DNA of 64,000 bases, taken from assembly GCF_963921235.1 (NCBI RefSeq), contig NC_086118.1, positions 33,728,001 through 33,792,000 of the forward strand, in the 5' to 3' direction. Numbering within the stretch: the first letter of the stretch is position 1; each line of letters begins with the position of its first letter. Made by a program: the position numbers and the translations under genes. Below are positions 18,487 through 64,000 of this stretch, piece by piece. The notes under the pieces were generated by a model. It had not been told where the DNA came from and did not search any database. It saw only the letters and a program-made list of their open reading frames with translations. Source of the DNA: Mobula hypostoma. Lineage: Eukaryota.

Positions 18487-19102
18487 CTTCTCGGCAGCTC
18501 TTCCGGGAATCCCACCGGAGCTCTTTGGGGACAATCTGCACCAAACCACCTCGAAACGCGTTGCTCAAAAACTGTCAAAAATAGCAAAGAATACTTTGCT
18601 GATAATTTACTTCTAGTTCATTTTCAAACTCGTTGATACTGCAGTGAACAGTCTCTTGGGAGAATTAATAAAAATGGTTAAAACACTAAATTACTTTGCT
18701 GAAAGAGGGTGGTAGAAAACCATACTTTAATACAAAGTACATAGATTTACCCAAATTCACAGCCATGCAAACTGCTAATGAAAATGAAATGGAAACAGAA
18801 AATATGGAAATTCTGTCAGACAGAATCTATGGAGAGAGAATCAGAGTTAACATCTCATGATAATATGAAAATATGACTCCTGCTTCTATGAATAGAATAT
18901 ACCAGACCATTCACACTACCTACCTTTGTCTGCTGTATACAGTATGTTTACATTTGATTTAAATCTCCTTTTATCTTGGTCCACCCTGGCCTATCTGTCC
19001 TGAATGTCATTCTTATTTGCCAAACTGCTTCCCCTGAAATGAATCAGTGTTATTTACCACAATTTTTTCATTTGGTTCTACCTTGAACAATCAAATTGTT
19101 CT

Positions 19103-21320: not shown

Positions 21321-21868
21321 AGAGGGATATTTACTGAATTTATTTGCAGCTATGGCCTGTTGTTCTAAATATCGCGTAAGTAAGATGTAACAAGAGAAAT
21401 GTATCTCCAGCCAACAGTATTTCTTCATATCCCCCCAACAGTTGCATTCACCTCACAGATTTTGTTTTATTGAAGCCAGCCGAAATGAATGTATAGGGCG
21501 AACATAATCAGCAACCAATATCCTCACGCCCATTCAATACAAGTAACCAGGGCAACAATTTCTCCCCATAGGCCCTTCCACAGGCATACACTGCATTGCA
21601 AAATTAGCATTATGACATGGGCGTAATCATCTTGGATGGGACAATGGTCTTGAGTGGAACCACTATTCACCTGTTCAAAGATGAGCAGTCCTGGACGTTG
21701 CCCACTCTAGGACTAACAGATAGACTTGGAGGTCTAGTTATTCTTAGCTCTTGCCTTAATGGCTACTTCTTTTAAACAAGTCCATACCTGCAAAACAACA
21801 TTTATATGGCTCTAGTTCCATGCCTATGCTGCTACAGCTGTTGAAACACAAAACAAAGAGACTTTACT

Positions 21869-22099
21869 GCAACACACATAAAAGTTGCTGGTGAATGCAG
21901 CCCGCCAGGCAGCATCTATAGGAAGAGGTACAGTCGATGTTTCAGGCCGAAACCCTTCGACCCTAGTCCTGACGAAGGGTTTCGGCCCGAAACATCAACT
22001 GTACCTCTTCCTATAGATGCTGCCTGGCCTGCTGCGTTCACCTGCATTTTTTTATGTATGTTGCTTGAATTTCCAGCATCTGCAGACTTCCTCATGCTT
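21869..22099 (+). mobile_element. Fold-back Penelope-type insertion with hammerhead (about 21965-22000)
   Basis: Imperfect ~90-bp inverted arms plus tail; TSD GAGACTT(T/C)ACTGCAA (21858-21872 and 22100-22114). Confidence 0.82.
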
Positions 22100-22370
22100 G
22101 AGACTTCACTGCAAAGCAACTTTTAAACACATCTTTCACTGTGTTATCATGCATGGTACCAGTGGAGGGCTTTAGTAGAGTCTTTCAGATCAGCACAGAC
22201 TTCCGCAAGTTTCGCAACTCAACTCTCAGACAAGGAGAATCTTCCCTCTGAGCTTGTGCAAAATTTAATATATTTTTTAAATATTAACTTTATTTTTAAT
22301 AGTTCTCAGGTGATTTTGAAATTTTTGTGTACCAATCAAAGTCAAAACACTTTCAAATATTCAACTGTAG

Positions 22371-22884
22371 TGTGAGACAGTGAACCAGAGGATTTGGGTG
22401 TTTGAAACCAATGCTTTTAATAATACTTTTTATAAGTTTTGTGCTTTTTAACAAACTCATGTATTTTTCACACTCACCGACAGAAAGCAGTATAGCAGCT
22501 AAACTAATGTATTATCACCTTTCTGATTTTTCATTGGCTAAGTGTTAGCATTTAGTCCACATGATGTAACTGTTTTCATTATGTAACTAATTAGCTAGTT
22601 TATTCCCTAGCTAGGATATTTCTCTTATCTATAAAACTGATGGATTTTCCAGAGGCACCATCGTGACTTCTTCTTTATTCCATTGTCTCCGCATCCATTC
22701 AACTCTTAGCATCGTTTCTCAGCTCTTTATTTAGTTTGCTTAGCATTTGTATGTTTGTTTGCACTCTAAAATAAACTGAAATCTTGGAATTAAGACTGCT
22801 CTTCATTCCTGACTCCCAAAAGGACCCTCGGGATCAGAAAATAAACAGAGATCCAACAGGGACAAGATTGCACCACCTGTCACA
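22371..22884 (+). mobile_element. Possible solo LTR
   Basis: TG...CA ends with a weak inverted repeat, internal TATAAA and AATAAA; no clean TSD. Confidence 0.3.
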
Positions 22885-25800: not shown

Positions 25801-25926
25801 ACTTCATTGTCAGCTACGGTTGCATCACCCTGCCTTTAGAATATTTATTCTTCTTCTTTGTGAGGTACATATCCTGAGCCTTTTGAATTGTTTCCAGAAA
25901 TTCCAACCATTACAAATTCCAACCAA

Positions 25927-26338
25927 CATAGAATTCTCCAACTTCCGGTAACATAGTATTCTCCAACTTCTGGTAATTCCCTCCCCCTCCCTTCCCCTAT
26001 CCCTATGTCACTCTGCCCCCTCCCCCAGCTGCCTACCTCCTCCCTCTTGGTTCCACCTCCTTTTACTACCCATTGTGTTTTCCCCTATTCTTTCTTCACC
26101 TTTCCTGACTATCACCTCCCTGCCTCCCTTCCCCCACCCCTTTATCTTTCCCCTTACTGATTTTTCACCTGGAACCTACCAGCCTTCTCCTTCCCACCCT
26201 CCCCCTCCACCTTCTTTGCAGGGCCTCTGCCCCTTCCCCCTACAGTCCTGACGAAGGGTTCCGGCCCGAAACGTCGACAGATCTTTTCCACGGATGCTGC
26301 CCAACCTGCTGAGCTCCTCCAGCGTGTTGTGAGTATTG
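25927..26338 (+). mobile_element. Penelope-like 3' end nested in CR1, with hammerhead at 26243-26280
   Basis: NIEFSNFR* C-terminus, pyrimidine-rich UTR, gtc-CUGACGA...GAAA-CGUC-gac; flanking repeat TTCCAACCA. Confidence 0.8.
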
Positions 26339-27022
26339 TTCCAACCATTACTGCTCTGCCGTTATCCCTGCTAGTATCCCCATCCAATCAGTTTTGGCCA
26401 GCTCCTCTCTCATGCCTCTGTAATTGCCATTACTCCACGATAATACTGATACAACTGACTTTAGCTTCCCCCTCTCAAAATGCAGGGTGACTTCTATCAC
26501 GTTATTATCACTATCCCGTAAGGGTTCCTTTACCTTAAGCTCTCTAATCAGCTCTGGTTCATTGTACAATACCCAATCTAGAATAGCTGATCCCCTAACG
26601 GATTCAACCACAAGCTGCTCTAAAAAGCCATCTTGTAGCATTCTACAAATCCCTCCCTCCCTTGAGATCCAGCACCAACCTGATTTTCCCAATCTACCTA
26701 CACATTGAAATCCCCCATGATTATCATAGCATTGCCCTCTTGACATGCCTTTTCTAATTCCTGTATATAATGCCCATCATGGTCTTCTTAAACTTGAGAT
26801 TTCTTAACTCTATCCACAAGGATTCTGCATCTTCCAATCATATGTCACATCTTTTTAAGGATTTTTTTTACCAACAGAGCCACTCCATCCCCCTTGCCTA
26901 TCTCCCTGTGCTTTTGATACAATGTTTATTCGTGGATGTTAAGCTCCCAGCTATAATCTTCCCTCAGCCATGATTCAGTGATGTCCACAATGTCATTCCT
27001 GCCAATCTGTAACTGTGCTACA

Positions 27023-27370
27023 TGTCTATCCCAACATGTGAAGACAGACTCCGGTGGATTGAGCGGACGAGACCAATGGAAGGTCCAACGGTCAAGAAGG
27101 CAGTCTGTGCAAGCGTCATGGAACATGTAGAGCACGACAAGACACAGAATATGTCCTAGTCATCCACTGCGCCTAATCCCATCTCCAACCATCTCAACTC
27201 TCGTCTTGCCACTGGATCCAGATGGGAATTGGGAAGAGAGAGTGAGACTGACGCTGTGCAACTCTCCCTCACTTAAATCCAAATCATGCGCTAGTCTCGA
27301 CACTATCATCATCATTTAAGTGACTAATGGTGTCGAGGTCTTCATTGACAATGATAGACGAACATGAAAA
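27023..27370 (+). mobile_element. RTE-related short retroposon nested in CR1
   Basis: 12-bp TSD AACTGTGCTACA (27011-27022 and 27371-27382); RTE-type 3' sequence (family assignment from recall). Confidence 0.65.
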
Positions 27371-28515
27371 AACTGTGCTACAAGTTTATCTACCTTATTC
27401 ATATACTGCATGCATTCAAATATAACACCTTCAGTCTAGTATTCATCACCCTGTTCGATTTTGTCCCCCTTTTACACTGAAACTCAACCTGTTGTGTGCA
27501 ATGTTACCTATCATCAGCCTGTTGTTGCCAGCAGTCTCACTGCCTCTCCTTTAAACCAAGTGCCCCATCCTCAGCCTATCACTCTGGTTCCCATCCCCTT
27601 GTCAAATTAGCCTGCGAGAATATTGGATCCCCTCCGGTTCAGGTGTAACCCGTCCCTTTTGTACAGGTCATACCTTCCCCAGAAGAGATTCCAATGATCC
27701 AGAAATCTGAAACCTTACCCCCTGCACCAGTTCTTCAGCCACGCACTCACCTACCAAACTTTCCTATTCTTACCCTCACTGGTGCGTGGCACAGGCAGCA
27801 ATCCAGAGATTACTACCCTGGCAGTCCTGCTTTTCAGCTTTCTACCTAACTCCCTAAATCTCTCTTCAGGATCTCTTTGCCTTTCCTACCTGTGTCATTG
27901 ATGCCAATATGTACCTAGACTTCTGGCTGCCCGCCCTCCCCCTTAGAATGTCATGGCCCCGATCCAAGACATGCCTGACCCTGACACCTGGAAGGCAACA
28001 TACTTTCATATTGTCTCTTTTGTGTCCACAGAATCTTGTCTCTTTTCCTCTCACTATGGCACCTCCTTTCGCCGCTGCGATCCCTCTTCACCTCTCTTCT
28101 CTTCTGAGACATACTCGGTTCCAGAGACCCAGTCACCACGGCTCCCCACCGGTGGGTCGTGCCCCTCAACAGCATACAAAACAGTATATTTGTTATTGAG
28201 GGGTACTCCAGGCTGGATGTCCATTTCCCTTCCTTCTCCTGACAGTCACCCAGTTACCTGCCGCCAGCAGCCTGGGAGTGACTCCCTCCCTGTAGCTCCA
28301 ACCTATGACTTCCTCAGTCTCCCATATGAGCCGACAGTCATCGAGCTGCAGCTTCAGTTCCTTAATATGTCACAGCAGAGCTATAAATCTATCCAACAAT
28401 ACAGGAGAACCATAAATCCATCCAACAGCATTAAACTGCAAAGTTCTATTTTAATTTTCTAGATTGGCACACTGAAAGCAAAATATTTATGTTTTATGCA
28501 CCTGAGTATAAAGTG

Positions 28516-40100: not shown

Positions 40101-42093
40101 TTCGTACTTATTGCAACTAACTTAAAGTTTTTATAGCCAGGAAACCCTGGTGGTCAGCCTTGTCAGTTGTCAGGGATGTTCCAGCAGAGTAGCATCCTCG
40201 GTGCACTGTGACTCACCGTGGCTCACAAGTGGACCATGGGAAATAGAGGCCCATTGAGCAAAGCCCCACACAATTGGACAGGTTAAGTGAGGGTATGAAT
40301 GGACAGTTCATCACAATTCCGAAGTGGGAGATCAAACCCAAAGCACGGCCAATTATGTTCAAGGCCAACAAGTCCGGGTGCATGGTGATCAGAAAGGGCA
40401 AAGTTACTAACAAGTTTAGCCTCCAAGTTCAGGGTGAGGTCATCCCTTCCATCGAAGGTAACCCCATAAAATGCTTGGGGAAGTGGTTTAATGTGTCACT
40501 GACAGATGGGGCCAATGTCACCAATGCTGTGAATCAGGCAGACGAATGGCTGAAGAAGATCGACAAATCCGGACTTCCGGGTAAATTCAAGACCTGGCTG
40601 TACTAATACGGCATTCTGCCCAGGCTTCTCTGGCTCTTCACACTTTATGAGTTCCCCATGACTGCTGTAGAGGGCATCGAGAGGAAAACCAACAAGCACC
40701 TGCGGAGATGGTTGGTAGTTGTCCCAAGCTTCTCTTCAGTGGGCCTCTACATTCATTCTGGGCATCTTGGGCTTCCCCTGTCATCTGTTTTGGAGGAATT
40801 CAAGGTGGCAAAATGCAGAGCCTTGTTAAGCTTGAGAGATTCCAATGATGACTTGGTAAAGCAAGCAGGTGTTACAACCAGATCTGGGCGCAAGTGGGCA
40901 GCCAACGCAGCTGTGGAGGAGGCAGTGTGTTCTCTGAAGCTGCGAGATATCATCGGCAACCCCTGCGTCGAGTGGCAAGGCCTCAGCTCAGTTGACTTCC
41001 AGAAGTGGGGAAACGCAAGCATTAGGAACAGGCGAGACATGATACAGGCAGAAGTACGGATCCGTGAGGAAGAGAAGCGGATTTCAAAGGCAGTGGAACA
41101 AGCATCCCAGGGTGCCTGGACAAAATGGGATCTGCCTAAGCGCAAGATCTCTTGGGCAGAGTTATGGAGACTGGAGCCCTTCCGTATTTCCTTCCTCTTG
41201 CGATCCATGTATGACACCCTTCCTTCGCCATTACATCTATACACATGGGGGATGAGAGAGGACCTGAACTGTAAGCTCTGTGGTCAAAAGGAGACACTGG
41301 CTCATATACCGTCCGGGTGTAAAACAGCTCTAACTCAAGGATGGTATAGGGGCGCCATGATAAGGTGCTTCTGACTCTTGCTGACACACTAGAGCGGGAG
41401 AGATGCAAGAAGAGGACGGCTGGCACAGATTTGAGGAAGGCCGTCACCTTCATCAAAGAGGGAGCTAGCCCTTTCGTAACCAAACAACCAAAGCCCAGTC
41501 TGCTGCTAATAGCCAGGTCCTGGGATATGAGGGTCGAAGTGGGAAGGAGGTTGCAGTTTCTGGATGTGGTGCACACAACCCTACGCCTGGACATTGTACT
41601 GTGGTCAACCGAAGACAAGAAAATAATTCTGGTTGAGCTGACTGTGCCATGGGAGGAGGGATGGGAAGAGGCCCACGAGAGAAAGGCCTTGAAGTACCAG
41701 CCGTTACTGCAGGAGTGTAAAGACGAGGGATGGCAGGCATGGTTGTTCCCTGTGGAGATCGGCTGCAGAGGTTTCCCAGACAAATCGGCATGGCGGTTGT
41801 TGTCAGATCTGGGCCTGGACGAAAGGAGCAAAAAACAAACAGTTCGTAGGTGGGGGAAGAGGCAGAACGAGCCTCTTGTTGGATTTGGAGTAGGCGAGAG
41901 GAGGGGAGCTGGAAGCCAGGAGGAGATGGGCAGTGATTTGGCCACCACTGCCGGCCCACCAACTGGAGAGTGTCGTGGTTAAGGGTCAAAACACTCGGTG
42001 AAGGTTGGGAACCACCTGATGACATCTGCTCCTGGCTGAAGGCTACGGTTACCTTATAAGGTAACTGGAGAATGCACCCTAACAGGTGTGATT
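40101..42093 (+). mobile_element. HERO/NeSL-like non-LTR retrotransposon (R2 superfamily, restriction-like endonuclease), truncated or internally deleted
   Basis: PIKCLGKWF and IDKSGLPGKFKTW RT thumb; CKLC..H..SGC knuckle; RHD, RxDIVLW, ELTVPWEE..AHERKALKY endonuclease motifs. Boundaries approximate. Confidence 0.85.
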
Positions 42094-52330: not shown

Positions 52331-53027
52331 GAACGAATGATTACATGATTAGTTGGAGCCGGATTGTGTTGCCAGCCTGGAGAAAAACTGTTCCTCACTC
52401 TATCTTTACAATCATGCAAGGAGCTCAATCCTGATTCAATGAAGGGTGTCAAAGGCTTGTCAGGAGCAACTCCGATGGACCTAATAGCGATGAGGCGTCA
52501 TCCTAGAGAAGGCACAATACAAGATTACTTGCATGGTAAGCAAGATAGAAGGCTTGCAATAGACAGAGTTGAAGAACGTCACAATGAGTCTCTGCAACCT
52601 CCAACGGCAATGTTGGGAAGTAGAAGAGCTAATGGGAATGGACTGCTCTAAGAGTATAAACACCTTCAACAGTAGCAGGGCCCAGAATAAGAGTGCTGAA
52701 GAAAAGGCTGAAATACAGTATTTGTAATCATGTTTGACCAGAAGAACAAAATAGATGATTCATCCCTGTTCCTTCCTGAGATCTCCAATTCAATTCTCTC
52801 AATGCGATATGAAGTTTCTGAGCTCAAATTTGTTTTGATAGCGATCTTAATTTTTTTTGCATAAGTTATTGGAATGCAAGTCTGAGCTTTTCTGGAACTG
52901 GGTGTCAAGCCTTGTAAGAATTGCGCATACTTCAAAGAGATCTGCTCTCACTCTTTCAAATTCCAGAGGATGCAGGACTATTCTACTCAGTATCTTCTTA
53001 TAACAAACCTCTGGAACCAGTGTAGTA

Positions 53028-54105
53028 ATCAGAATCAGAATCAGGTTTAATATCATTGGCGTATGTCGTGAAATTTGTTAACTATGCAGCAGCAGTACAA
53101 CACAATACGTGATAGATATTTTTTAAAAAAACGGGAATTACAGTGTGTGTGTGAGATGGAGCTGACTAATTTAACAACTCTCTGCCGCTTACTTTTATCC
53201 TGTGCAAGAGCCCCACCACACCAGATGGTGATGCAGCCAGTCAGAATGCTCTCCGTGATACATCTGTAGAAATTTTCCAATGTTTTAGGTGACAAACCAA
53301 ATCTCCTCAAACTCCTAATGAAATATATCTGCTGTCTTGTCTTCTTTATAGCTGCACTGATCTGTTGGGACCAGGTTAGGACTTCAGTGATATTAACAGC
53401 CAGGAACTTGAAATTGTTCACTCTCTCCACCTCTGATCCCTCTCAGTATTGGTGTGTGTTCCTTCATCTTACCATTTCTGAAGTCCACAATCAGCTCTTG
53501 GGCCTTACTGACGCTGAGTGCGAGGTTGTTGCTGCAAAGCCACTCAACTAGCTGGTAATCTCACTCCTGTACGCCCTCTCATCAGCATCTGAGATTCTGG
53601 CAACAATGGTTGAATCACCAGCAAATTTATAGATGGCATTTGAACTGTGCTTAGCCACACAGTCATGGGTGTAGAGAGAGTAGAGCAGTGGGCTAAACAC
53701 ACACCCCTGAGGTGCGCCAGTGTTGATTGTTAGCGAGGTGGAGATGTTATCACCAATCCGCATGGATTGTGGTCTTTCGCTTAGGAAGTGCAGGATCCAA
53801 TTGCAGAGGGAGGTACAGAAGCTCAGGATCTGTAGCTTTTTGATCAGGACTGCAGGTACGATGGTGTTAAACGCTGAGCTATAGTCAATAAACAGCATTC
53901 TAACATAGATCTTTGTATTGCCCAAGTGATCTAAGGCCGCATGGACAGCCATTGAAATCATGTCTGCTGTAGACCTATTGTGGCAATAGGCAAAATGCAG
54001 TGGGTCCAGGTACTCACTGAGGCAAGAGTTGATTTTAGCCATGACCAACTTCTCAAAGCCCTTCATCACTGTGGTACTGGACAATAGTTGTTAAGGCAGT
54101 TCACA
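53028..54105 (-). mobile_element. Rex-Babar RT fragment (duplication copy 1)
   Basis: [11 protein letters not shown] and [10 protein letters not shown]; (TCTGAT)n tail. Confidence 0.85.
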
Positions 54106-54806
54106 GCAAATCCTCTAAGTCAAGCATATTCTCTTTTTAGGTAGGAAAACTATAAACTGTACAAAATACTCCAGGTGCTGTTCAATAAAGGTTCATATAA
54201 TTGCCGTAAAAAATTTTTACACTGCACTCAAGTCTTCTTGTATTGATGGCTAACATATCACTTATCTCTATCAAAGGCCTCAACTATCTTAAAAATTACA
54301 TGTTGCACATCAAATTCAAATTTCCCTTTAATCATTAAGATTTATCCTACATTTCAGCCCTTAAAGTCACTAACATGACATTGAAATTAATGAACTTCCT
54401 CCTTTTTTAACTAACAGAGACACTAGATCAAATAAACCATTTGTGTGCTCAAAGTTTCCATAATTCAGTGATAAATCAGATTTAATGAAATCATGAATAC
54501 ATCAGGAAAGTAAACAATGTGGCACTTTTAAATTGATGCTGGTGGGTTGTTGCATGTTTAGTGCACGTATCATGGAAGAAGTAGAGGACTTTGAATGACT
54601 CGTATTGATTTTGTGATCATAGCTGTGTTGTAGAAAGATGGTGACAAGGAAAAAGGGTGGTAATCTCGTAACTAATCATCTTTTCCCTACTGTGATATGG
54701 TATGTTAAATCTGGCAGAGTTTTGGATTATATTCACAACCTTTCCTCTTACCAGCCAGATTGCATGGTGCAGAATCAAAGTTTAAAAAGGAATACATATT
54801 GGTGAT

Positions 54807-54884
54807 ACTGCACAATATCAGTGTTAATTATTAAACTTCTCAAACATCTATTAATAGATTTCTAGATATGGTTAAGACTATAAA
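54807..54884 (+). promoter_or_regulatory. fabp1 copy 1 proximal promoter: HNF1-like site GTTAATTATTAAA (54823-54835) and TATA box (54879-54884)
   Basis: 12/13 match to the HNF1 consensus GTTAATNATTAAC; TATAAA about 55 bp upstream of the ATG. Confidence 0.7.
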
Positions 54885-54936
54885 GCAAAGTAGAAAGCCA
54901 TCACATTTTACATCCACTGCAAAAGGAGCTGCCAAA

Positions 54937-55003
54937 ATGTCCTTCTCAGGAAAATATGAGCTTCAGAGCAGAGAGAACTTTGAGCCATTCATGAAAGCCA
55001 TTG
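54937..55003 (+). CDS. fabp1: FABP1-like gene copy 1, exon 1 (MSFSGKYELQSRENFEPFMKAIG)
   Basis: Near-identical to the FABP1 N-terminus [23 protein letters not shown]; 67 bp, G|gtaagt donor. Confidence 0.93.
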
Positions 55004-55794
55004 GTAAGTTAAATATACAGCTCCTGAGCTGAGCAGAATTTCAATAAAATAAAGTGTGCTTTTCTTAATCAAAACTGATTTGAGCTGCTACTTGATCCAA
55101 AACTTAGCAGAAGAAGTATTTTATCAATTAGAAGATATTGTTCAGAATATCATTCATGACATAAACAGAACATTTCAACCGCTTCATCTAAGATAATAAT
55201 AAATAATTTATCCATTCTATATGATTGAGGATAAAATTTTGTCTTTTTAAATATAAGTGTTTGTAATTTTAAATTTCTCCTCCTCATCAATTACCAGGAA
55301 AACGCTCTGAACTGCGTAAAAATCGATTTGCTAATGCTAAGTATTCACGGGAAGGATCTGAATGCAGCTATTGACCTACACAATATTTTAAAAGCCAGTG
55401 CTATAAACTAACTGCATAAATATTGTTTAATTCAACTTTGCTTAAAATTAAACACCAAGTTTTTTAATAAATCTCTTTACTTCAAGTGTTTACACTAGCA
55501 CCATTAATTCCTTTCTCTGAGCCACTTTTAAAAATGGGTTATCACCTTACTCAAGAATAAGTGAAAGAGATAATATCTAATTAAAACTGCTGCTACCTTT
55601 GAACACAATCACACTTTAACCAGGAGGAATTAGGAAGCCATTTCGATGTTACGAAACAAACACTAAGACATACCGACCTTCCTGAGAACAAAACACATTT
55701 ACTTCATATTTCTCTGAATCTAATGTTTTAGTTGAAAAGATAACAAAAGTTTGGATCCAAATTCTCAAATTTTCTCGTTTTATGTTTTTCTCAG

Positions 55795-55967
55795 GAACCT
55801 CAGATGAAGTGATTCAAAAATACAAAGACGTGAAAAGTATCACAGAGATCATTCAAAATGGAAATCACTTTGATTGCAAAATCACAACTGGAGATAATGT
55901 GATTCACAACGTATTTACCATAGGACAAGAAGCTGAGTTTGGAACACTCGCAGTCAGTAAGCTGAAG
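55795..55967 (+). CDS. fabp1: FABP1-like copy 1, exon 2 (173 bp)
   Basis: TSDEVIQKYKDVKSITEIIQNGNHF...NVFTIGQEAEF aligns ungapped to FABP1; ag/gt boundaries. Confidence 0.93.
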
Positions 55968-57155
55968 GTACAGTTTGCAGCCTCGCTGTTCACGCAGGAT
56001 TAGAAGTAATTGTTTCAGGTCGCCGAAGTTAGGCAGATCAAAGAATTTCTCAGTGCACAATGTGATACAAAATGGCAAACCTATTCGTAAAGAGCAACTT
56101 CACCTCCTGAAGTTGGGCAGCAAATCAACCCCTGCTGCTTTCGCGGTCTCTTTAAGCATCTTTTAACTATGGCTTTCTGCCTTAGGACAATACGACTCTA
56201 GTATTCTGCCTACAGCTTGAGTTAATTTGTATCTGTCAGTTGGTGCTGAGGGCTAGCCTCTTTATCTTGTTTATTTTCCTTAATTTTCATTTGCACCCAT
56301 CTCATCTTAAAACACAACAGCATATTATAAATAAATACACAAAATTATGTTTGTGGAGATGGGGAAGAAGAGAGAAAGCCAATGAGGAAGTCTTTCCATC
56401 TCATGCATCGTTTTCTGGATTTTCAGTCACCTTAGGTTATTTTTTTGTAGGACACCAACACTGCAAATTTCAACTTGGAAGGTCCGCTTTCTGCTTCTTA
56501 ATATCTATAATGATTTCTTGTTTTGATAGAATGACAGCTCTGGGCCCCAAAGTATCTCACACCAATTAATCTCATCAGTAGGTTGGAAAGATTGAGGTCT
56601 TCATATCATAAGAAACAAGGAACCGTTGTGTTGTCAGCTGTAGAACTGAAGAGCCAGTGAGCCTCTCCAGAGAGAGTTAGAGTCAGTGAGCCAGATGTCT
56701 GCATTTAACTCATGCCTCAACAGCTCAGTCCGACCCATGAATAGTTTCAAAATAAAATAAATTACAAAGCAAGGCCTATCTAAGGTACAAGTAACCATAG
56801 CTGCCAGCCTACTCTGAACCCCTTCACTCAGGGCCTATATATTGATTTCTCCTCTGGGTCTTTGCGTGGACTTCTAGCAAGCCGACTAGCGGGCATCTAT
56901 GACTGGGTAACCATCCAGGATCTATCACCAGGCTTCCGCTCAGGGCCAATTCATAGATCTCCATCAGCTGAGCTGTACTGATCTGCTTCAGGACCTTATG
57001 TTCTATCGACAATCTGCTGATGCAATCAAATAAGCAAAATCCCAAGATCTCTTGGCTGCCCAGATCTTAAAAGGGACTAAAAGGATTTATCCATATATTC
57101 AAATTCCAATGGATTTTTTTTGCAATCGTTAAATTCTAATATTATTTTTCTTCAG

Positions 57156-57248
57156 TCCACAGCAAATTTTGATGGTCCAAACAAGATTGTTGTCAAATTG
57201 GATGCAATAACATTGGTTACAGAACTGAATGAGGACAAACTAATTAAT
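57156..57248 (+). CDS. fabp1: FABP1-like copy 1, exon 3 (93 bp; STANFDGPNKIVVKLDAITLVTELNEDKLIN)
   Basis: ttcttcag acceptor, gtaagt donor; VTELN motif; phase 0/0. Confidence 0.92.
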
Positions 57249-57439
57249 GTAAGTGCCTCTCTATTCTTCTATTAGTTTAAGTGGGTTTCTGCCCCTGCAA
57301 TCTGAGTAGAAATTTCAAATGCCAACTAAGTAATTGCTAACCTATTGTCATGTTTTTTAGAAAGTTGAATTTATTTCTGCATGGTTTTAATTCATACATT
57401 AATACATTGGGCTTTGTATACCTGTGTATTAGACATTTA

Positions 57440-57860
57440 GCTGGGATGCTTTCTTTCTGAGTATAAGGAGAGATTCGATTGGATTCCCTGGAGTGAGCAG
57501 AGGCAGAGAGTTACTGCAAAGAGGTTTATAAGATTATAAGGGGCACAGGTAATCACAATCTTTTTTCCAGAGAAGAAAGTCTAAAATTAAAGGGCATGGA
57601 TTTAAGGCGAGAGAGGAAAGATTTAGAAGGCACCAGAGGAACAACTTTTTCACGAAGAGTGGGATGGGTAAAGGGAACAAACTGCCAGAGAAGCGGTGGA
57701 GACAGGCACAATTACAACATTTTAAAAAACATTTGGACAGGGAAGGTTTAAAAGGGATATAGCCCAAACATAGGTAGATGGGATAAGCATTGATTGGCAT
57801 CTGAGTCAGCACGGATGAGATGGGCCGAAGTCCCTCTTTCCATGCTGTGTTGCTATGAAG
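57440..57860 (+). mobile_element. CR1 3' fragment in fabp1 intron 3
   Basis: Degraded CR1 C-terminus and UTR. Confidence 0.6.
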
Positions 57861-58503
57861 CTGTAACAGTCAGAATCAGAGTCTGGTTTAGTATCACTGA
57901 CATCTATGTCATGAAAATTGTTGTTTTATGACAGAGGTTCAATGCAGAGACACTAAATTTCTATAAATTACAAAATAAATAAATAGTGTAAAAAAAGTGA
58001 CAAAATAATATTCATGGACTCATGGCAGAGTGGAAGAAGCTACTCCTACAGTATCTACAGAAAGCCACGATAATCCTTGAGGGTCTGTCTCAGCACGTAA
58101 TTCACTGGAGGAACTCAGTAAATCAGGCAGTGTCTGTGGTCCACATGGAGGGTCTGAACCCAAAATATCAACCATCCATTTCTCTCCATAGATGCTGCCT
58201 GGCCCTTTGAGATCCTCCAGCATATTGTGTGTTGCTCCAGACTCCAACGCTTGTCTCTTTGGGGTCCGGTTGATATTAAATTGAAAGTCCAGTTTCCAAA
58301 GGACTACATTGGAAAGTCAATGGAAATTATGTGTCAAAGTATATTTATAGAGAAACTTACTCATATATAATTACTTTTAATGAAAGTTATAATATATTTG
58401 TCATTAAGATTTGAACTTGTATTAGGTCTTCATAAAGAATACTTGAAACAAATCTGAAAGATGTTCCATTTGGATAAACTTCAGTATCTTGTTGTTCTTT
58501 CAG

Positions 58504-58554
58504 AAACTAACGGCTGGAAATATCATCTACACAAGTATCAGTAAAAAAATATAA
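58504..58554 (+). CDS. fabp1: FABP1-like copy 1, exon 4 (KLTAGNIIYTSISKKI*); spliced CDS is 384 bp = 127 aa
   Basis: ttctttcag acceptor; ISKKI C-terminus; total length equals the 127 aa of FABP1. Confidence 0.92.
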   Translation, partial: KLTAGNIIYTSISKKI

Positions 58555-58569
58555 AATGCTTTGTCTTGA

Positions 58570-58608
58570 AATAAACATACTTGTCTTGTCTGAGTCACTT
58601 CAAATAAA
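58570..58608 (+). terminator. Two AATAAA polyadenylation signals of fabp1 copy 1 (58570, 58603)
   Basis: Both lie immediately 3' of the stop codon and are followed by GT-rich sequence. Confidence 0.65.
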
Positions 58609-59714
58609 ATGCAACGGTTGGAAAAAGTCGTTTTATGTTGTCATTTGTCGAAACTAGGGATATGTTGATTTGGCTGCAGTAATAACTAAATGATTCCTAG
58701 CTATAGCTGTTCAAATCTTCATCTGGATGTAAACCTAATAGTTTGAACTCAATTGTCAGCTTTTATCTCTGGTTGTGTGTGGATTATTATATTAATTATA
58801 GAAACCCAAAAGGATTTTGTTATGTTGTTGTGGAAAAGAAAACTGTGTGTCATCAAACTGTGGGACAGGGTGGGTTACTATCAACAGCCCATTGAGTAAG
58901 CTAAATGCAATATATATATTTATATATAAACTCCCATTTTCAAACCCCATCTGAAGCGAATGCCTGTTATTATTCATTCAAGGCATGTGGGTTTTCCTGC
59001 AAAGGCTGTTGATCCCTATTGGGCCTTGAGAAGATGATAGAGAAGAACTGAGGTGCTTTTAGTAGGTGCATATTGGTAAAGACTTCCATAATTTAGACAA
59101 ATGATGAAGAAACATAAGGCCACTATGACTTACAATTCAGAAGAATCTTGTGAATGCTACTACCCCATGTATCTGCAACTATTTCCTCCTACATGGCAAA
59201 GAACATAGTGCTGGGAAGTCTTACGTTGGCGAGTACCATCAGCCATCATGTACGGCCTCTTTTAACTTGCATCACAAGAGAAGTTTTGAGACATCCTTCT
59301 TAAATTTGACTATCCTCATTAACACAGCTGCTATATTATTGTATGCTCTCTGTGATCTAAAGCAATGGACTATATCTCAGTCAAGCAAGGCTGTACCGTT
59401 ATCACATTATTTTCTTCAATCTTTCTAGCTGTGATTTCTCACCTTGCCTCAAACATACTTCAAGCTGGAGTGAAGCTAATCAATCCAACATGCTTAGTAA
59501 TTTGTCCACTCCCAAACTAATCTCTGTCATCAAGTGCAATATGCAGATGATGCACATTTTCATCTTTGCAGTTCTACTTTCCATACCTCAGGAACCACCC
59601 ATCAATATAAGCATACATCGGTAACGAAATAAAACATTTCCTTCAGTTCATTATCATTGTCTTTGCTTGTCCGAGGAAAATCACGATCTTTAACAGGCAA
59701 ATGTTGAACTGGGC

Positions 59715-60168
59715 AGAACATAGGAACTAGAAAAAGAATATTTGGAAACGTCATTCATCAACACAAGGCCAATTTCTACCTAATTGCCATTGTCCTGCAT
59801 CATCCCCATATCCTTTGATACCTTTACAGCAAGAAATCCATCAATCTCTCTTTGGACTGAACTTAATAACTGAGTTTCCACAGCCAAATGCAACATAGAA
59901 TTCAAAAGTTTCATACTGTCTACAAGAAGCAATTTCTCCTCACTTCAGTTCTAAATGGTTTACCCCTAATTCTCAGACTATGACCTCTGACTGGAGTGTT
60001 AGTCTAGACTGGTCAGCCAGGGGAAACATCCTCCTTTGGTCTAGCCTGTCAAGCCTTGTAAGAATTGTGTATACTTCAAAGAGATCTGCTTTCACTCTTT
60101 CAAATTCCAGAGAATGCAGGACTATTCTACTCAATATCTTCTTATAACAAACCTCTGGAACCAGTGTA
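59715..60168 (-). mobile_element. CR1 3' fragment spanning the copy 1/copy 2 homology boundary
   Basis: LHSLEFERVKADLFEVYTILTRLDRLD..MFPL remnant. Confidence 0.7.
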
Positions 60169-61245
60169 GTAATCAGAATCAGAATCAGGTTTAATATCAT
60201 CAGCGTATGTCGTGAAATTTGTTAACTATGCAGCAGCAGTACAACACAATACGTGATAGATATTTTTTAAAAAACAGGAATTACAGTGTGTGTGTGAGAT
60301 GGAGCTGACTAATTTAACAACTCTCTGCAGCTTACTTTTATCCTGTGCAAGAGCCCCACCACACCATCATGCAGCCAGTCAGAATGCTCTCCGTGGTACA
60401 TCTGTAGAAATTTTCCAGTGTTTTAGGTGACAAACCAAATCTCCACAAACTCCTAATGAAATATATCTGCCGTCTTGCCTTCTTTATAGCTGCACTGATC
60501 TGTTGGAACCAGGTTAGGACTTCAGTGATATTAACAGCCAGGAACTTGAAATTGTTCACTCTCTCCACCTCTGATCCCTCTCAGTATTGGTGTGTGTTCC
60601 CTCATCTTACCATTTCTGAAGTCCACAATCAGCTCTTGGGCCTTACTGACGCTGAGTGCGAGGTTGTTGCTGCAAAGCCACTCAACTAGCTGGTAATCTC
60701 ACTCCTGTACGCCCTCTCATCAGCATCTGAGATTCTGGCAACAATGGTTGAATCACCAGCAAATTTATAGATGGCATTTGAACTGTGCTTAGCCACACAG
60801 TCATGGGTGTAGAGAGAGTAGAGCAGTGGGCTAAACACACACCCCTGAGGTGCGCCAGTGTTGATTGTTAGCGAGGTGGAGATGTTATCACCAATCCGCA
60901 TGGATTGTGGTCTTTCAGTTAGGAAGTGCAGGATCCAATTGCAGAGGGAGGTACAGAAGCTCAGGATCTGTAGCTTTTTGATCAGGACTGCAGGTACGAT
61001 GGTGTTAAACGCTGAGCTATAGTCAATAAACAGCATTCTAACATAGATCTTTGTATTGCCCAAGTGATCTAAGGCCGCATGAAGAGCCATAGAGATCACG
61101 TCTGCCATAGATCTATTGTGGCAATAGGCAAATTGCAGTGGGTCCAGGTACTCACTGAGGCAAGAGTTGATTTTAGCCATGACCAACTTCTCAAAGCCCT
61201 TCATCACTGTGGTACTGGACAATAGTTGTTAAGGCAGCTCACACA
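60169..61245 (-). mobile_element. Rex-Babar RT fragment (duplication copy 2)
   Basis: Paralog of 53028-54105. Confidence 0.85.
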
Positions 61246-61969
61246 GCAAATCTTCACAGCATATCCTCTAAGTCAAGCATGTTCTCTTTTTAGCTAGGAA
61301 AGCTAAAACTGTACAAAATACTCCAGGTGCTGTTTCAACAAGGCTTCATATAATTGCCGTAAAGTGTTTTTACACTGCACTCAAATCTTCTTGTATTAAT
61401 GGCTAACATACCACTTATCTCTATCAAAGGCCTCAACTATCTTAAAAATTACATGTTGCACATCAAATTCAAATTTCCCTTTAATCATTAAGATTTATGC
61501 TACATTTCAGCCCTTAAAATCTCTAATATGACGTTGAAATTAATGAACTTCCTCCTTTTTTAACTAACAGAGACACTAGATCAAACAAACCATTTTTGTG
61601 CTCAAAGTTTCCATGAATCAGTGATAAATCAGATTTAATGAAATCATGAATACATCAGGAAAGTAAACAATGTGGCACTTTTAATTTGATGCTGGTGGGT
61701 TGTTGCAAGTTTAGTGCACGTATCATGGAATAGGTAGAGGATTTTGAATGCTGTTGGACTCATTGATTTTGTGATCAAAACTGTGTTGCAGAAAGATGGT
61801 GACAAGGAAGAAGGGTGGTAATCTCGTAACTAATCATCTTTTCCCTACTGTGATATGGTATGTTAAATCTGGCAGAGTTTTGGATTATATTCACAACCTT
61901 TCCTCTTACCAGCCAGATTGCATGGTGCAGAATCAAAATTTAAAAAGGAATACATACAGTATTGGTGAT

Positions 61970-62047
61970 ATTGCATAATATCAGTGTTAATTATTAAACT
62001 TCTCAAACATTTATTAATAGATTTCTAGATATGGTTAAGACTATAAA
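61970..62047 (+). promoter_or_regulatory. fabp1 copy 2 promoter: C/EBP-like ATTGCATAAT, HNF1-like site (61986-61998), TATA box (62042-62047)
   Basis: Motif matches; paralogous to the copy 1 promoter. Confidence 0.65.
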
Positions 62048-62099
62048 GCAAAGTAGAAAGCCATCACATTTTACATCCACTGCAAAAGGAGCTGCCAAA

Positions 62100-62166
62100 A
62101 TGTCCTTCTCAGGAAAATATGAGCTTCAGAGCAGAGAGAACTTTGAGCCATTCATGAAAGCCATTG
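62100..62166 (+). CDS. fabp1: FABP1-like copy 2, exon 1 (any further exons lie beyond the window)
   Basis: Identical to 54937-55003 with an intact gtaagt donor. Confidence 0.85.
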
Positions 62167-62298
62167 GTAAGTTAAATATACAGCTCCTGAGCTGAGCAGA
62201 ATTTCAATAAAATAAAGTGTGCTTTTCTTAATCAAAACTGATTTGAGCTGCTACTTGATCCAAAACTTAGCAGAAGAGGTATTTTATCAATTAGAAGA

Positions 62299-64000
62299 CG
62301 GGGGAGATTTTGTACAATTTCTTTTCTTCGGTATTCACTAAGGAGAAGGATATTGAATTGTGTAAGGTGAAGGAAACAAGAAGGGTAGTTATGGAAAGTA
62401 TGACGATTAAAGAAGAGGAAGTACTGGCGCTTTTAAGGAATATAAAAGTGGATAAGTCTCCGGGTCCAGACAAGATATTCCCTAGGACCTTGAGGGAAGT
62501 TAGTGTGGAAATAGCAGGGGCTCTGACAGCAATATTTCAAATGTCATTAGAAATGGGGATGGTGCCAGAGGATTGGTGTATTGCTCATGTGGATCCATTG
62601 TTTAAAAAGAGTTCTAAGAGTAAACTTAGTAATTATCAGCCTGTGAGTTTGACGTCAGTGGTGGGTAATTTGATGGAAAGTATTCTTAGAGATGGTATAT
62701 ATAATTATCTGGATAGACAGGGTCTGATTAGGAACAGTCAACATGGATTTGTGCGTGGAAGGTCATGTTTGACAAATCTTATTGAATTTTTTGAAGAGGT
62801 TACTAGGAAAGTTGACGAGAGTAAAGTGGTAGATGTTGTCTATATGGACTTCAGTAAGGCCTTTGACAAGGTTCCATACGGAAGGTTAGTTAGGAAGGTT
62901 CAATCGTTAGGCATTAATATTGAAGTAGTAAAATGGATTCAGCAGTGGCTGGATAGGAGATGTCAGAGAGTAGTGGTGGATAACTGTGTGTCAGATTGGA
63001 GGACAGTGTGTAGCGGTGTGCCTCAGGGATCTGTACTGGGTTCAATGTTGTTTATCATATATATTAATGATCTGGATGATGGGGTGGTAAATTGGATTAG
63101 TAAGTATGCAGATGATACTAAGATAGATGGCGTTGTGGATAATGAAGTAGGTTTTCAATGCTTGCAGAGGGATTTAGGCCAGTTAGAAGAATGGGCTGAA
63201 AGATGGCAGATGGAGTTTAATGCTGAAAAATGTGAGGTGCTACATTTTGGTAGGACTAATCAAAATAGGACATACATGGTAAATGGTAGGGCATTGAAGA
63301 ATGCTGTAGAACAGAGGGATCTAGGAATAATGGTGCATAGTTCCCTGAAGGTGGAATCTCATGTGGATAGGGTGGTGAAGAAAGCTTTTGGTATGCTGGC
63401 CTTTATTAATCAGAGCGTTGAGTATAGGAGTTGGGATATAATGTTGAAATTGTATAAGGCATTGGTAAGGCCAAATTTGGAGTACTGTTTACAGTTCTGG
63501 TCACCAAATTATAGGAAAGATGTCAATAAAATTGAGAGAGTACAGAGGAGATTTACTAAAATGATGCCTGGGTTTCATCTCCTAAGTTACAGAGAAAGGT
63601 TGAACAAGTTAGGTCTTTATTCTTTGGAGCGTAGAAGGTTGAGGGGGGACTTGATAGAGGTGTTTAAAATTACGAGGGGGATTGATAAAGTTGATGTGGA
63701 TAGGCTTTTTCCATTGAGAATTGGGGAGATTTAAACAAGAGGACATGAGTTGAGAGATAAAGGGCAAAAGTTTAGGGGTAACATGAGGGGAAACGTCTTT
63801 ACTCAGAGAGTGGTAGCTGTGTAGAACGAGCTTCCAGCAGAAGTGGTTGAGGCAGGTTCGATGTTGTCATTTAAAGTTAAATTGGATAGATATATGGACA
63901 GGAAAGGAATGGAGGGTTATGGGCTGAGTGCAGGTCAGTGGGACTAGGTGAGAGTAAGAGTTCGGCACGGACTAGAAGGACCGAGATGGCCTGTTTTCGT
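62299..64000 (+). mobile_element. Young 5'-truncated CR1 LINE in intron 1 of fabp1 copy 2
   Basis: 474-aa open RT (DFSKAFD, GVPQGS, KYADD); absent from the paralogous site at 55135. Confidence 0.93.

What the first reader, a model, noticed from the sequence alone, without database searches (positions are those of the whole stretch)
54937..58554. Intact FABP1 paralog lacking the fatty-acid-anchoring Arg122
Seen: the spliced 127-aa protein aligns ungapped to FABP1 but ends IYTSISKKI rather than VFKRISKRI, i.e. R122S. It also shows G32Y, S39T and ELETMTG>EFGTLAV in the portal turn, while exon 1, the splice sites, TATA box, HNF1 site and polyA signals are intact. Established: Arg122 with Ser39/Ser124 binds the carboxylate of the buried fatty acid in FABP1, and FABP-family members have switched ligands before (bile acids, retinoids, bilirubin in eel UnaG). 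Inference: this may be a neofunctionalised binder of neutral or other ligands (e.g. bile alcohols, squalene, alkylglycerols, pigments) in a duplicated array.
Basis: partly seen in the sequence, partly recalled or inferred. Interest (0 to 1): 0.7.

Follow-up and report, generated by a model that had tools for sequence, protein, structure and literature searches.

The report
Devil-ray FABP1 duplicate without Arg122
One of two side-by-side copies of a liver-type fatty-acid-binding protein gene in the lesser devil ray is intact and transcribed, but has lost the buried arginine (and its aspartate neighbour) that normally grips a fatty acid's acid group, so its lipid preference has probably shifted, though this is untested.

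Summary
Window 54937-58554 holds an intact four-exon, 127-aa FABP1-type gene with Ser at position 122. It is annotated in NCBI as XP_062930477.1, "FABP1, liver-like", Mobula hypostoma.

- **Expression:** Contigs that behave as RNA remove exactly the three predicted introns, carry a poly(A) tail behind 58626, and agree with the AGT (Ser122) codon.
- **Duplication:** The gene is copy 1 of a two-copy tandem duplication with a 7.16-kb period, about 95.6% identical in flanking DNA. Copy 2 starts at 62100, runs off the window, and keeps Arg122. So do M. birostris and all other batoid and most shark orthologues.
- **Inherited features:** G32Y, S39T and most of the EF..T portal turn are shared by other batoid orthologues, so they are not special to this copy.
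- **Copy-1-specific changes:** These are G76V, D111N, T119I and R122S. Two of them hit near-invariant sites (G76 in 220 of 223 sequences, R122 in 214 of 223).
- **Coupled change:** Asp111 and Arg122 change together here (N+S). They also change together in Scyliorhinus canicula (A+M). The Callorhinchus tandem-array copy has S+S.
- **Frequency:** R122S is rare but recurrent; a teleost and a lizard entry also show it.

My best reading is an expressed duplicate whose inner carboxylate clamp has lost its charges. A relaxed-constraint duplicate is the main rival. Ligand specificity is untested.

The parts
52903..55135 (+). Left part of tandem duplication unit 1: upstream DNA, promoter, exon 1 and the start of intron 1. 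It is paralogous to 60047-62298.
   Evidence: blastn gives 95.6% identity over 2260 nt; repeat families have a spacing of 7138-7163.
54823..54835 (+). HNF1-like motif GTTAATTATTAAA, 114 nt upstream of the ATG.
   Evidence: It matches the consensus at 12 of 13 positions. There are only 2 matches in the window, one per gene copy, against 0.36 expected. Function is inferred, not tested.
54879..54885 (+). TATA box (TATAAAG).
   Evidence: Read from the sequence. RNA depth rises within 54836-54971, and a spliced contig starts at 54919.
54937..55003 (+). Exon 1 coding part (codons 1-22 plus 1 nt).
   Evidence: the spliced joint 55002/55003 to 55794/55795 is seen in RNA contigs.
55795..55967 (+). Exon 2 (173 nt). 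It contains Tyr32, Thr39 and the portal turn with Val76 (codon at 55953-55955).
   Evidence: (Pfam Lipocalin_7, E = 7.6e-08).
57156..57248 (+). Exon 3 (93 nt). Its last codon, 57246-57248, is Asn111, where the orthologues have Asp.
58504..58626 (+). Exon 4: coding 58504-58554 including the stop, Ser122 codon AGT at 58534-58536, 3'UTR with AATAAA at 58603-58608, and the poly(A) site behind 58626.
   Evidence: (poly(A) loose end in X2; no variant letters in exon 4) and 49.
60047..62298 (+). Start of tandem copy 2 (XP_062930478.1, which keeps Arg122). Exon 1 coding sequence is at 62100-62166; the rest of the gene lies beyond the window.
62299..64000 (+). LINE-type retroelement inserted in intron 1 of copy 2 (reverse-transcriptase ORF at 62310-63734).
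   Evidence: Homology between the copies ends at 62298; Pfam RVT_1 matches at 1.7e-27.

Best explanation
This is copy 1 of two tandem copies of the elasmobranch FABP1-like gene of Mobula hypostoma. I call its group 'lineage B': 127 aa, with Asp111 and Arg122 in almost all members. The gene is shown to be intact, spliced as predicted, polyadenylated and transcribed, and its protein models confidently as a liver-type FABP barrel. After the duplication, copy 1 replaced both members of what is probably a buried Asp111-Arg122 pair with uncharged polar residues (Asn111, Ser122). It also changed the near-invariant portal-turn Gly76 to Val. Copy 2 kept the ancestral residues. My inference is that copy 1 is still a working cytosolic lipid carrier. 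Its inner binding site no longer clamps a carboxylate electrostatically, and it offers a small polar cluster instead (Thr39, Asn111, Ser122, Ser124). By analogy with the rat L-FABP R122Q mutant, that should weaken fatty-acid anchoring moderately and favour bulkier or non-ionic ligands. The pair would then have divided or extended the ancestral ligand range. The gene model, the expression and the lineage-specific substitutions are shown. The salt bridge, the ligand shift and the adaptive value are inferred.
For: - **Gene model and expression:** The model rests. One search shows three GT..AG joints at the predicted borders, a poly(A) tail behind 58626, and summed contig depth in run X3 of roughly 7e3-1.8e5 in exon-containing bins against 13-230 in introns.
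- **Ser122 is real:** Exon 4 shows no variant letters, and its copy-1-specific words occur in RNA-like and DNA runs.
- **Identity and paralogue:** Searches identify the gene and its tandem neighbour.
- **Fold:** The model has pLDDT 94.7 and TM 0.96 with rmsd about 1 A to human L-FABP 3stk/3stm.
- **Phylogeny:** Copy 1 nests inside Mobula, within the batoids, with a short end branch of 0.038. The path to copy 2 is 0.051, so copy 1 is not accelerated.
- **Derived changes:** G76V, D111N, T119I and R122S are specific to copy 1. Gly76 is present in 220 of 223 and Arg122 in 214 of 223 well-formed FABP1-type proteins. All changes on the copy-2 lineage fall on variable columns.
- **Coupling of 111 and 122:** In lineage B, 11 sequences have Asp plus Arg, 2 have neither (Mobula copy 1 with N+S, S. 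canicula with A+M), and none is mixed.
- **Literature:** In human FABP1, Asn111 and Arg122 contact the same carboxylate. R122Q in rat FABP1 only moderately lowers fatty-acid binding and raises binding of bulkier ligands, and CRBP1, which binds non-acid ligands, has Gln at the equivalent site.
Against: - No binding data exist for this protein.
- Hitting two near-invariant sites is also what relaxed constraint on a redundant duplicate would produce.
- The two copies differ at 10 of 127 residues while flanking DNA differs by about 4.4%. That suggests a protein-level rate close to neutral for the pair as a whole.
- All RNA and DNA evidence comes from one species label, two studies and possibly one individual, so fixation in the population is not shown.
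- No copy-1 orthologue was found in M. birostris, where only one gene is called within 10 kb on either side.
- R122S also appears in single teleost and lizard entries, so the change may be tolerated without any special role.
- The tissue of the runs is not given, and contig depth is a poor measure of expression.
Confidence: 0.5

Rival explanations
1. Copy 1 is a redundant duplicate drifting under relaxed constraint. Copy 2, and possibly a lineage-A FABP1 elsewhere in the genome, carries the ancestral job. R122S, G76V and D111N would be mildly harmful or neutral changes that are tolerated. Copy 1 would then be an ordinary, somewhat weaker fatty-acid binder with no new role.
For: Two of the four copy-1-specific substitutions hit near-invariant positions, whereas none of the copy-2 changes do. 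The overall protein divergence between the copies (10 of 127 residues) is close to what the 4.4% flanking divergence would give without constraint. R122Q in rat FABP1 costs only a moderate loss of fatty-acid binding. No copy-1 orthologue is annotated in M. birostris. Sporadic R122S entries occur in other vertebrates.
Against: The reading frame, all splice sites, the promoter motifs and the poly(A) signal are intact, even though the duplication is probably old (about 4.4% divergence in flanking DNA). The transcript is spliced, and its summed contig depth is high in run X3, although the tool warns that depth is a poor measure of expression. The copy-1 branch is not longer than the copy-2 path. 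Positions 111 and 122 changed together, as they did independently in S. canicula; the Callorhinchus copy also has non-ancestral residues at both. That looks compensatory rather than random.
Confidence: 0.35
2. Ser122 is an individual-level allele, a gene-conversion mosaic or a somatic or assembly peculiarity of the sequenced animal. It would not be a fixed feature of the species.
For: All holders of the copy-1-specific exon-4 words carry one species label and come from two studies, one of which is flagged as the possible source sample. RNA contigs show mosaic combinations, such as X2 contig 6 with Phe95/Ala98 but a copy-1 exon 4. They also show a third exon-3 ending (TTTGAT) that matches neither annotated copy.
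Against: Independent library types (RNA-like runs X2 and X3, DNA runs X5-X8) agree on the sequence. No Arg-encoding variant of the copy-1 exon 4 was reported at the 10% threshold. Four linked derived substitutions across three exons define the copy. An outright assembly error is therefore excluded.
Confidence: 0.1

Closest known systems
[quoted passage not shown]
   Same: The length is the same (127 aa) and the alignment is ungapped at 52-53% identity. The predicted fold matches (TM 0.96), and the four-exon layout is the one I recall for FABP genes (not checked here). Ser124 and Asn111 are present, and position 39 keeps a hydroxyl side chain.
   Different: Arg122, the charged anchor of the inner fatty acid, is Ser. 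Gly76 in the portal turn is Val. Gly32 is Tyr, and the E-F turn reads EFGTLAV; the last two features are shared with other batoid orthologues.
Rat L-FABP R122Q site-directed mutant (Thumser et al. 1996, as summarised in PMC10197203)
   Same: The same position loses its charge in favour of a polar uncharged residue. It is the only experimental guide to what such a change does.
   Different: That is a laboratory single mutant in a mammalian background with Asn111. Here the change is natural, is to Ser, and is accompanied by D111N, G76V and T119I. I did not read the primary paper, only the review's summary.
Mobula hypostoma tandem copy 2 (XP_062930478.1) and the M. birostris FABP1-like gene (XP_072098352.1)
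   Same: They are 92% and 90% identical to copy 1. Copy 2 also shares the promoter motifs, and its exon 1 product is identical.
   Different: They keep Gly76, Asp111, Thr119 and Arg122, and they share Ser75, Phe95 and Thr123, which copy 1 lacks.
Callorhinchus milii FABP liver-like (NP_001279758.1), the middle gene of a three-gene tandem array (L001)
   Same: It is a FABP1-type gene in a tandem array of a cartilaginous fish, with Ser at position 122 and a non-ancestral residue at 111 (Ser). Its two neighbours keep Asn111 and Arg122.
   Different: It is only about 49% identical and is not the orthologue of Mobula copy 1. Its placement in the tree is unresolved, so this is an independent event.
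Zebrafish fabp1b.1/fabp1b.2 tandem duplicates
   Same: They are a precedent for tandem duplication of FABP1 by unequal crossing-over in a fish (PMC7193176).
   Different: It is a different lineage. The one fabp1b.1-like sequence examined here (from Chanos) keeps Arg122.
Cellular retinol-binding protein 1 (CRBP1)
   Same: It is an iLBP in which the beta-J arginine is replaced by an uncharged polar residue (Gln128) and which binds non-acid ligands. This is a working analogy for what loss of the arginine can mean.
   Different: It belongs to a different iLBP subfamily with low identity, and there is no evidence that the ray protein binds retinoids.

Membership tests
FABP1 / liver-type FABP (iLBP subfamily with FABP6 and FABP10) | Cytosolic FABP (lipocalin-like) domain spanning the whole ~127-aa protein | tested here: met
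   Pfam Lipocalin_7 matches exon 2 at E = 7.6e-08. PF14651 and PF00061 are precomputed for the annotated protein.
FABP1 / liver-type FABP (iLBP subfamily with FABP6 and FABP10) | Four exons and three introns at conserved positions (coding lengths 67/173/93/51 nt) | tested here: met
   all three junctions are confirmed in RNA contigs. The Callorhinchus paralogue has 67/173/93-nt exons as well. That this is the canonical FABP layout comes from my own knowledge.
FABP1 / liver-type FABP (iLBP subfamily with FABP6 and FABP10) | Ten-stranded beta-barrel capped by a helix-turn-helix | tested here: met
   The AlphaFold2 model has pLDDT 94.7, with 10 strands and 2 helices. Its best PDB matches are human and rat L-FABP at TM 0.95-0.97.
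FABP1 / liver-type FABP (iLBP subfamily with FABP6 and FABP10) | Closer to FABP1 than to FABP10 (Lb-FABP) or FABP6 by sequence and phylogeny | tested here: met
   Against the PDB, exon 2 scores 3.5e-16 to 2.7e-12 with FABP1, 1e-08 with zebrafish Lb-FABP and 1e-03 with FABP6. All full-length hits are named FABP1. FABP10 fragments fall outside the FABP1 clade with 100/100 support.
FABP1 / liver-type FABP (iLBP subfamily with FABP6 and FABP10) | Arg122 on strand beta-J anchoring the carboxylate of the buried ligand, helped by Ser39, Ser124 and Asn111 | tested here: not met
   Position 122 is Ser (codon AGT, 58534-58536), confirmed in RNA and DNA contigs. Ser124 is present, position 39 is Thr and position 111 is Asn. 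Arg122 is present in 214 of 223 relatives. The gene is a member by descent, but it lacks this functional hallmark.
FABP1 / liver-type FABP (iLBP subfamily with FABP6 and FABP10) | Binds two long-chain fatty acids, plus bulky ligands, in a large cavity | not testable with these tools
   This needs recombinant protein and binding assays or a structure with ligand.
FABP1 / liver-type FABP (iLBP subfamily with FABP6 and FABP10) | Liver and intestine expression driven by an HNF1-type promoter | tested here: inconclusive
   The HNF1-like motif and TATA box are present. Summed contig depth is high in run X3 and low in X1 and X4, but the tissues of the coded runs are not given.
FABP10 / liver basic FABP (bile-acid-binding protein) | Groups with Lb-FABP sequences and structures | tested here: not met
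   It is only 31-39% identical to the zebrafish, chicken and axolotl L-BABP structures, against 52-53% to FABP1. FABP10 fragments are the outgroup in the trees.

The most novel reading that the evidence does not exclude
Cartilaginous fishes, which keep several FABP1-like paralogues, have repeatedly converted one copy into a carrier without the carboxylate clamp. This would have happened through coupled changes at positions 111 and 122: Mobula copy 1 (N+S) and S. canicula (A+M) lost an Asp111-Arg122 pair, and the Callorhinchus array copy reads S+S. These copies would specialise in abundant non-acid or bulky lipids of the elasmobranch liver and gut, such as bile-alcohol sulfates, alkylglycerols or squalene. 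That would be a natural, convergent ligand-class switch within FABP1.
Probability: 0.15. Interest if true: 0.65.

Novelty: new variant of a known kind. Interest (0 to 1): 0.4.

Why it matters
FABP1 is among the best-studied lipid chaperones, and Arg122 is treated as its fixed carboxylate anchor. A naturally occurring, transcribed paralogue lacks both Arg122 and its Asp111 neighbour. Beside it sits a sister copy, 92% identical, that keeps both residues. Together they form a ready-made matched pair for asking what the anchor contributes in vivo and how FABP ligand ranges evolve after duplication. The recurrence of similar paired changes in a catshark and a chimaera hints at a repeatable route. 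It also touches the unusual lipid biology of elasmobranchs. If the change proves to be simple drift, the finding is an ordinary young duplicate.

Tried and rejected
- **Assembly or sequencing error for Ser122:** rejected. RNA-like and DNA contigs agree.
- **Pseudogene:** rejected. The frame, the splice sites, the promoter motifs and the poly(A) signal are intact, and spliced polyadenylated transcripts exist.
- **FABP10 or bile-acid-binding-protein identity:** rejected on sequence, structure and tree.
- **'The whole set of odd residues is unique to this gene':** rejected. Tyr32, Thr39 and most of the EF..T turn are shared with other batoid orthologues.
- **Codon-level dN/dS:** could not be done. 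The look-up of encoding contigs returned no DNA for copy 2, M. birostris, Hypanus or S. canicula because the files were too large. Only a rough count from RNA variants was possible: about 7 non-synonymous changes against 1 synonymous change seen in exons 1-3. I do not lean on this number.
- **Timing of the duplication:** the tree puts copy 2 with M. birostris (97-99 / 89-90 support). The AU test does not reject the two M. hypostoma copies being sisters (p = 0.07). Sites 28 and 34 favour the latter, perhaps through 5' gene conversion.
- **Looking for the Ser122 exon in other species' runs:** only the same species label holds it. With 2 sampled words this is no evidence of absence.
- **Earlier scan notes:** nothing beyond this same finding.
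- **My own error:** I mis-framed the partial upstream Callorhinchus gene, so its placement there is meaningless. The correct exon-4 reading (...VYTRQSKKI) comes.
- **Synteny with SMYD1/THNSL2:** not tested. No non-repeat ORFs were recognised elsewhere in the window.
- **Full-length query:** I avoided typing the spliced protein. I first searched with exon 2 by reference and then used P0105:24-150, which equals the 127-aa protein.
Full report
**1. What is in the sequence**

Reading 54600-58900 and assembling the exons gives a clean four-exon gene on the + strand.

- The exons are 54937-55003, 55795-55967, 57156-57248 and 58504-58554, with coding lengths of 67, 173, 93 and 51 nt.
- Every intron is GT..AG.
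- The product is 127 aa and ends ...GNIIYTSISKKI.
- Exon 2 alone hits Pfam Lipocalin_7.
- Among solved structures, exon 2 matches human FABP1 at about 4e-16 and rat FABP1 at about 3e-12. Zebrafish liver basic FABP is far weaker (1e-08) and FABP6 weaker still (1e-03).
- Codon 122 is AGT (58534-58536).
- Upstream lie TATAAAG (54879-54885) and GTTAATTATTAAA (54823-54835). The HNF1-like motif occurs only twice in the whole window, each time 114 nt before the ATG of a copy, against 0.36 expected by chance.

**2. It is transcribed, spliced as predicted, and Ser122 is real**

Four public runs of one study hold the gene. They are kept as contigs and their type is only guessed to be RNA. I laid them on 54700-58750.

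- The contigs skip exactly 55003|55795, 55967|57156 and 57248|58504, all GT..AG.
- One 440-nt contig (run X2) joins all four exons and ends in a run of A behind 58626. That is 18 nt past the second AATAAA (58603-58608). These features show that the runs contain cDNA.
- In run X3 the summed contig depth is about 7e3-1.8e5 in exon-containing bins, against 13-230 in the introns. The tool warns that contig depth is a poor measure of expression, so I take only a strong excess of mature mRNA from this.
- No alternative letter is reported anywhere in exon 4.
- A second search used a 66-nt probe in which every 31-mer is specific to copy 1. Its words occur in RNA-like runs X2 and X3 and in four DNA runs of the probable source sample.
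- All of this evidence comes from one species label and two studies, possibly one animal.

**3. Identity**

I searched by reference with the exon-2 reading frame and then with P0105:24-150.

- The gene is NCBI XP_062930477.1, 'fatty acid-binding protein 1, liver-like', of Mobula hypostoma.
- The NCBI model has 150 aa because it starts at an in-frame ATG at 54868. That ATG lies 9 nt upstream of the TATA box.
- RNA depth rises only within 54836-54971, and a spliced contig starts at 54919.
- The M. birostris model has 127 aa.
- The 23-residue extension is therefore probably an annotation artefact.

**4. The duplication**

- Region 52903-55135 matches 60047-62298 at 95.6% identity.
- A second exon 1, with an identical product, sits at 62100-62166.
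- Intron 1 of that second copy is interrupted at 62299 by a LINE with a reverse-transcriptase ORF, and the window then ends.
- NCBI calls exactly two FABP genes there, 7163 nt apart, with nothing else within 10 kb downstream of copy 2.
- Copy 2 (XP_062930478.1) ends ...GNITYTRTSKKL, so it keeps Arg122.
- RNA variants seen (N46D, L95F, I98A and exon 3 ending in GAT) match copy 2, so both copies are transcribed.

**5. Where the odd residues arose**

The orthologues examined come from Hemitrygon, Hypanus, Pristis, three skates, Carcharodon, Heterodontus and Scyliorhinus torazame. All of them keep Arg122.

- Tyr or Phe at 32, Thr39 and most of the EF..T turn are shared by other batoid orthologues. 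They are inherited, not features of this copy.
- A column-by-column comparison leaves four changes specific to copy 1: G76V, D111N, T119I and R122S.
- Copy 2 and M. birostris share A75S, L95F and I123T.
- In maximum-likelihood trees the batoid sequences follow the species tree. Copy 1 is sister to (copy 2, M. birostris) with 97-99/89-90 support, which would place the duplication before the two Mobula species split.
- An AU test does not reject the two M. hypostoma copies being sisters (p = 0.07).
- Sites 28 and 34, together with the 99%-identical promoter and exon 1 block, suggest 5' gene conversion.
- The end branch of copy 1 (0.038) is no longer than the path to copy 2 (0.051).

**6. How unusual the changes are**

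Val76 occurs only here.

Position 122 is not Arg in these cases:

| Sequence | Residue 111 | Residue 122 |
|---|---|---|
| Mobula copy 1 | Asn | Ser |
| Callorhinchus milii, two near-identical entries | Ser | Ser |
| Scyliorhinus canicula, lineage-B gene | Ala | Met |
| Highly divergent Scyliorhinus paralogue, two species | Glu | Lys |
| Leptodactylus | Asn | Lys |
| Collichthys | Asn | Ser |
| Phrynocephalus | Asn | Ser |

- Loss of Arg122 is therefore rare (about 4% of sequences) but recurrent.
- About four of the roughly seven events are in cartilaginous fishes, a minority of the sequences in the set.
- Every substitution on the copy-2 lineage falls on a variable column.

**7. Several FABP1-like lineages in cartilaginous fishes**

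A search with the Callorhinchus protein and the resulting tree show a second, well-supported group, which I call lineage A.

- Lineage A proteins have 128 aa and end ...YKRISKRIS. Members come from Pristis, Narcine, Chiloscyllium and Pristiophorus, and the group also takes in a Callorhinchus gene.
- The window gene belongs to a different group, lineage B.
- Pristis has both lineages, on different chromosome-scale contigs.
- Callorhinchus carries at least three FABP1-like genes in tandem (L001).
- Only the middle Callorhinchus gene has Ser122, together with Ser111. Its neighbours have Asn111 and Arg122.
- The window gene is thus a paralogue in two senses. It belongs to lineage B rather than lineage A, and it is one of two recent tandem copies.
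- I could not test whether M. hypostoma also has a lineage-A gene.

**8. A coupled change**

- Lineage B is marked by Asp at 111, where most other FABP1s have an uncharged residue (Asn, His or Ser).
- In human FABP1, Asn111 and Arg122 contact the same carboxylate, so the two side chains are neighbours in the cavity.
- Among the 13 lineage-B sequences, 11 have Asp111 plus Arg122 and two have neither (Mobula copy 1 with N+S, S. canicula with A+M). None has only one of the two.
- A naive 2x2 exact test gives p of about 0.013, but there are only two independent events.
- The Callorhinchus Ser122 copy also differs from its neighbours at 111.
- I infer a buried Asp111-Arg122 ion pair whose two halves are lost together.
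- That pattern is what a protein still selected to fold and function would show. It is the main reason I rank 'working protein with an altered site' above 'decaying copy'.

**9. Structure**

- With a 46-sequence alignment, AlphaFold2 gives a mean pLDDT of 94.7.
- The model has ten strands and the helix-turn-helix. The only softer block is residues 71-80, around Val76.
- Foldseek puts human and rat L-FABP first (TM 0.95-0.97, rmsd about 1 A, 127 columns). Bile-acid-binding proteins follow at 31-39% identity.
- Ser122 therefore occupies the Arg122 position on strand beta-J.
- Coordinates are not returned by the tool, so I could not measure side-chain contacts.

**10. Mechanism**

*Shown:*
- The gene is an intact, transcribed FABP1-type gene.
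- Its protein should fold like L-FABP.
- It lacks the charged anchor and has lost the neighbouring acidic residue.

*Inferred:*
- The inner site now offers only hydroxyl and amide groups (Thr39, Asn111, Ser122, Ser124).
[quoted passage not shown] It also notes that CRBP1, which binds non-acid ligands, has Gln at the equivalent position (PMC10197203).
- The most defensible prediction is therefore a shifted preference and weaker carboxylate anchoring, not abolished lipid binding.
- Val76 in the portal turn may further alter ligand entry.
- Specific ligands (bile alcohols, squalene, alkylglycerols, pigments) are speculation.

**11. Rivals**

- **Relaxed constraint on a redundant copy.** This fits the hits on conserved sites. 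It also fits the near-neutral overall protein divergence: 10 of 127 residues against about 4.4% in flanking DNA. My count from RNA variants, about 7 non-synonymous against 1 synonymous change in exons 1-3, is too small and too incomplete to use.
- **An allele that is not fixed.** This cannot be excluded with one animal. It is fed by two oddities: a mosaic contig and a third exon-3 ending (TTTGAT, giving Phe110-Asp111).
- **Assembly error.** This is excluded.

**12. Novelty and score**

- The gene is already annotated, tandem FABP1 duplicates are known in zebrafish (PMC7193176), and R122S appears sporadically elsewhere.
- Five full-text searches found no description of an Arg122-less FABP1 paralogue or of the 111/122 coupling in cartilaginous fishes. 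The searched library is incomplete.
- I class this as a new variant of a known kind. It is a useful natural matched pair for FABP biochemistry.
- Interest is moderate (0.4).

Noticed in passing
window 54868-54936: The NCBI protein model (150 aa) starts at an in-frame ATG at 54868, which lies 9 nt upstream of the TATA box. RNA depth rises only within 54836-54971, and a spliced contig begins at 54919. The 23-residue N-terminal extension, also present on the copy 2 model, is probably an annotation artefact; the M. birostris model has 127 aa.
   Followed up: partly
window 57242-57248 (exon 3 end), run X3: RNA contigs show three different exon-3 endings joined to exon 4: AAT (copy 1, Asn111), GAT (copy 2, Asp111) and TTTGAT (Phe110-Asp111). 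The third matches neither annotated copy. It could be an allele or an unassembled third copy.
   Followed up: no
window 54974-58626, run X2 contig 6: A 440-nt spliced, polyadenylated contig combines copy-2-like exon 3 letters (Phe95, Ala98) with Asn46, Asn111 and a copy-1 exon 4. It could be a chimeric assembly of two near-identical paralogues, or a gene-conversion allele.
   Followed up: no
window 62299-64000 (ORF 62310-63734): A LINE-type retroelement with a 474-aa reverse-transcriptase ORF is inserted in intron 1 of copy 2 and is absent from copy 1. Other RT-bearing ORFs lie at 1769-2803 (with a weak zf-RVT match at 2915-3673), 11943-13571 (-), a weak zf-RVT match at 40658-41374, and 53548-54084 (-). 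The last has a same-length counterpart at 60686-61222 (-), which lies inside the duplicated unit.
   Followed up: partly
L001 1-23217 (Callorhinchus milii, MU249832.1): Three FABP1-like genes lie in tandem. The upstream gene (exon 4 at 3201-3257, ...VYTRQSKKI) keeps Arg122. The middle gene (10001-13217) has Ser111 and Ser122. The downstream gene (15957-20843, 136 aa with a 9-residue C-terminal tail) keeps Arg122 and groups with lineage A.
   Followed up: partly
P0260 (Scyliorhinus canicula) versus P0261 (S. torazame): The S. canicula lineage-B FABP1-like protein has Ala111 and Met122, where its close relative S. torazame has Asp111 and Arg122. This is a second independent paired loss. Both catsharks also carry a very divergent paralogue (P0071, P0229) ending ...ITARKIRKKI.
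   Followed up: partly
P0291 (Collichthys lucidus), P0316 (Phrynocephalus forsythii): Single FABP1 entries of a teleost and a lizard also read Ser at position 122 (...YKSPSKRM and ...YKSISKRI). I did not check whether these are real or are sequence or annotation errors.
   Followed up: no
window 12001-28000: Strongly negative GC skew (about -0.34 to -0.41) occurs in most 2-kb bins between 12 and 28 kb, without large tandem repeats. The region contains minus-strand LINE ORFs and the N runs at 17656-18011 and 18045-18222, which I left untouched.
   Followed up: no
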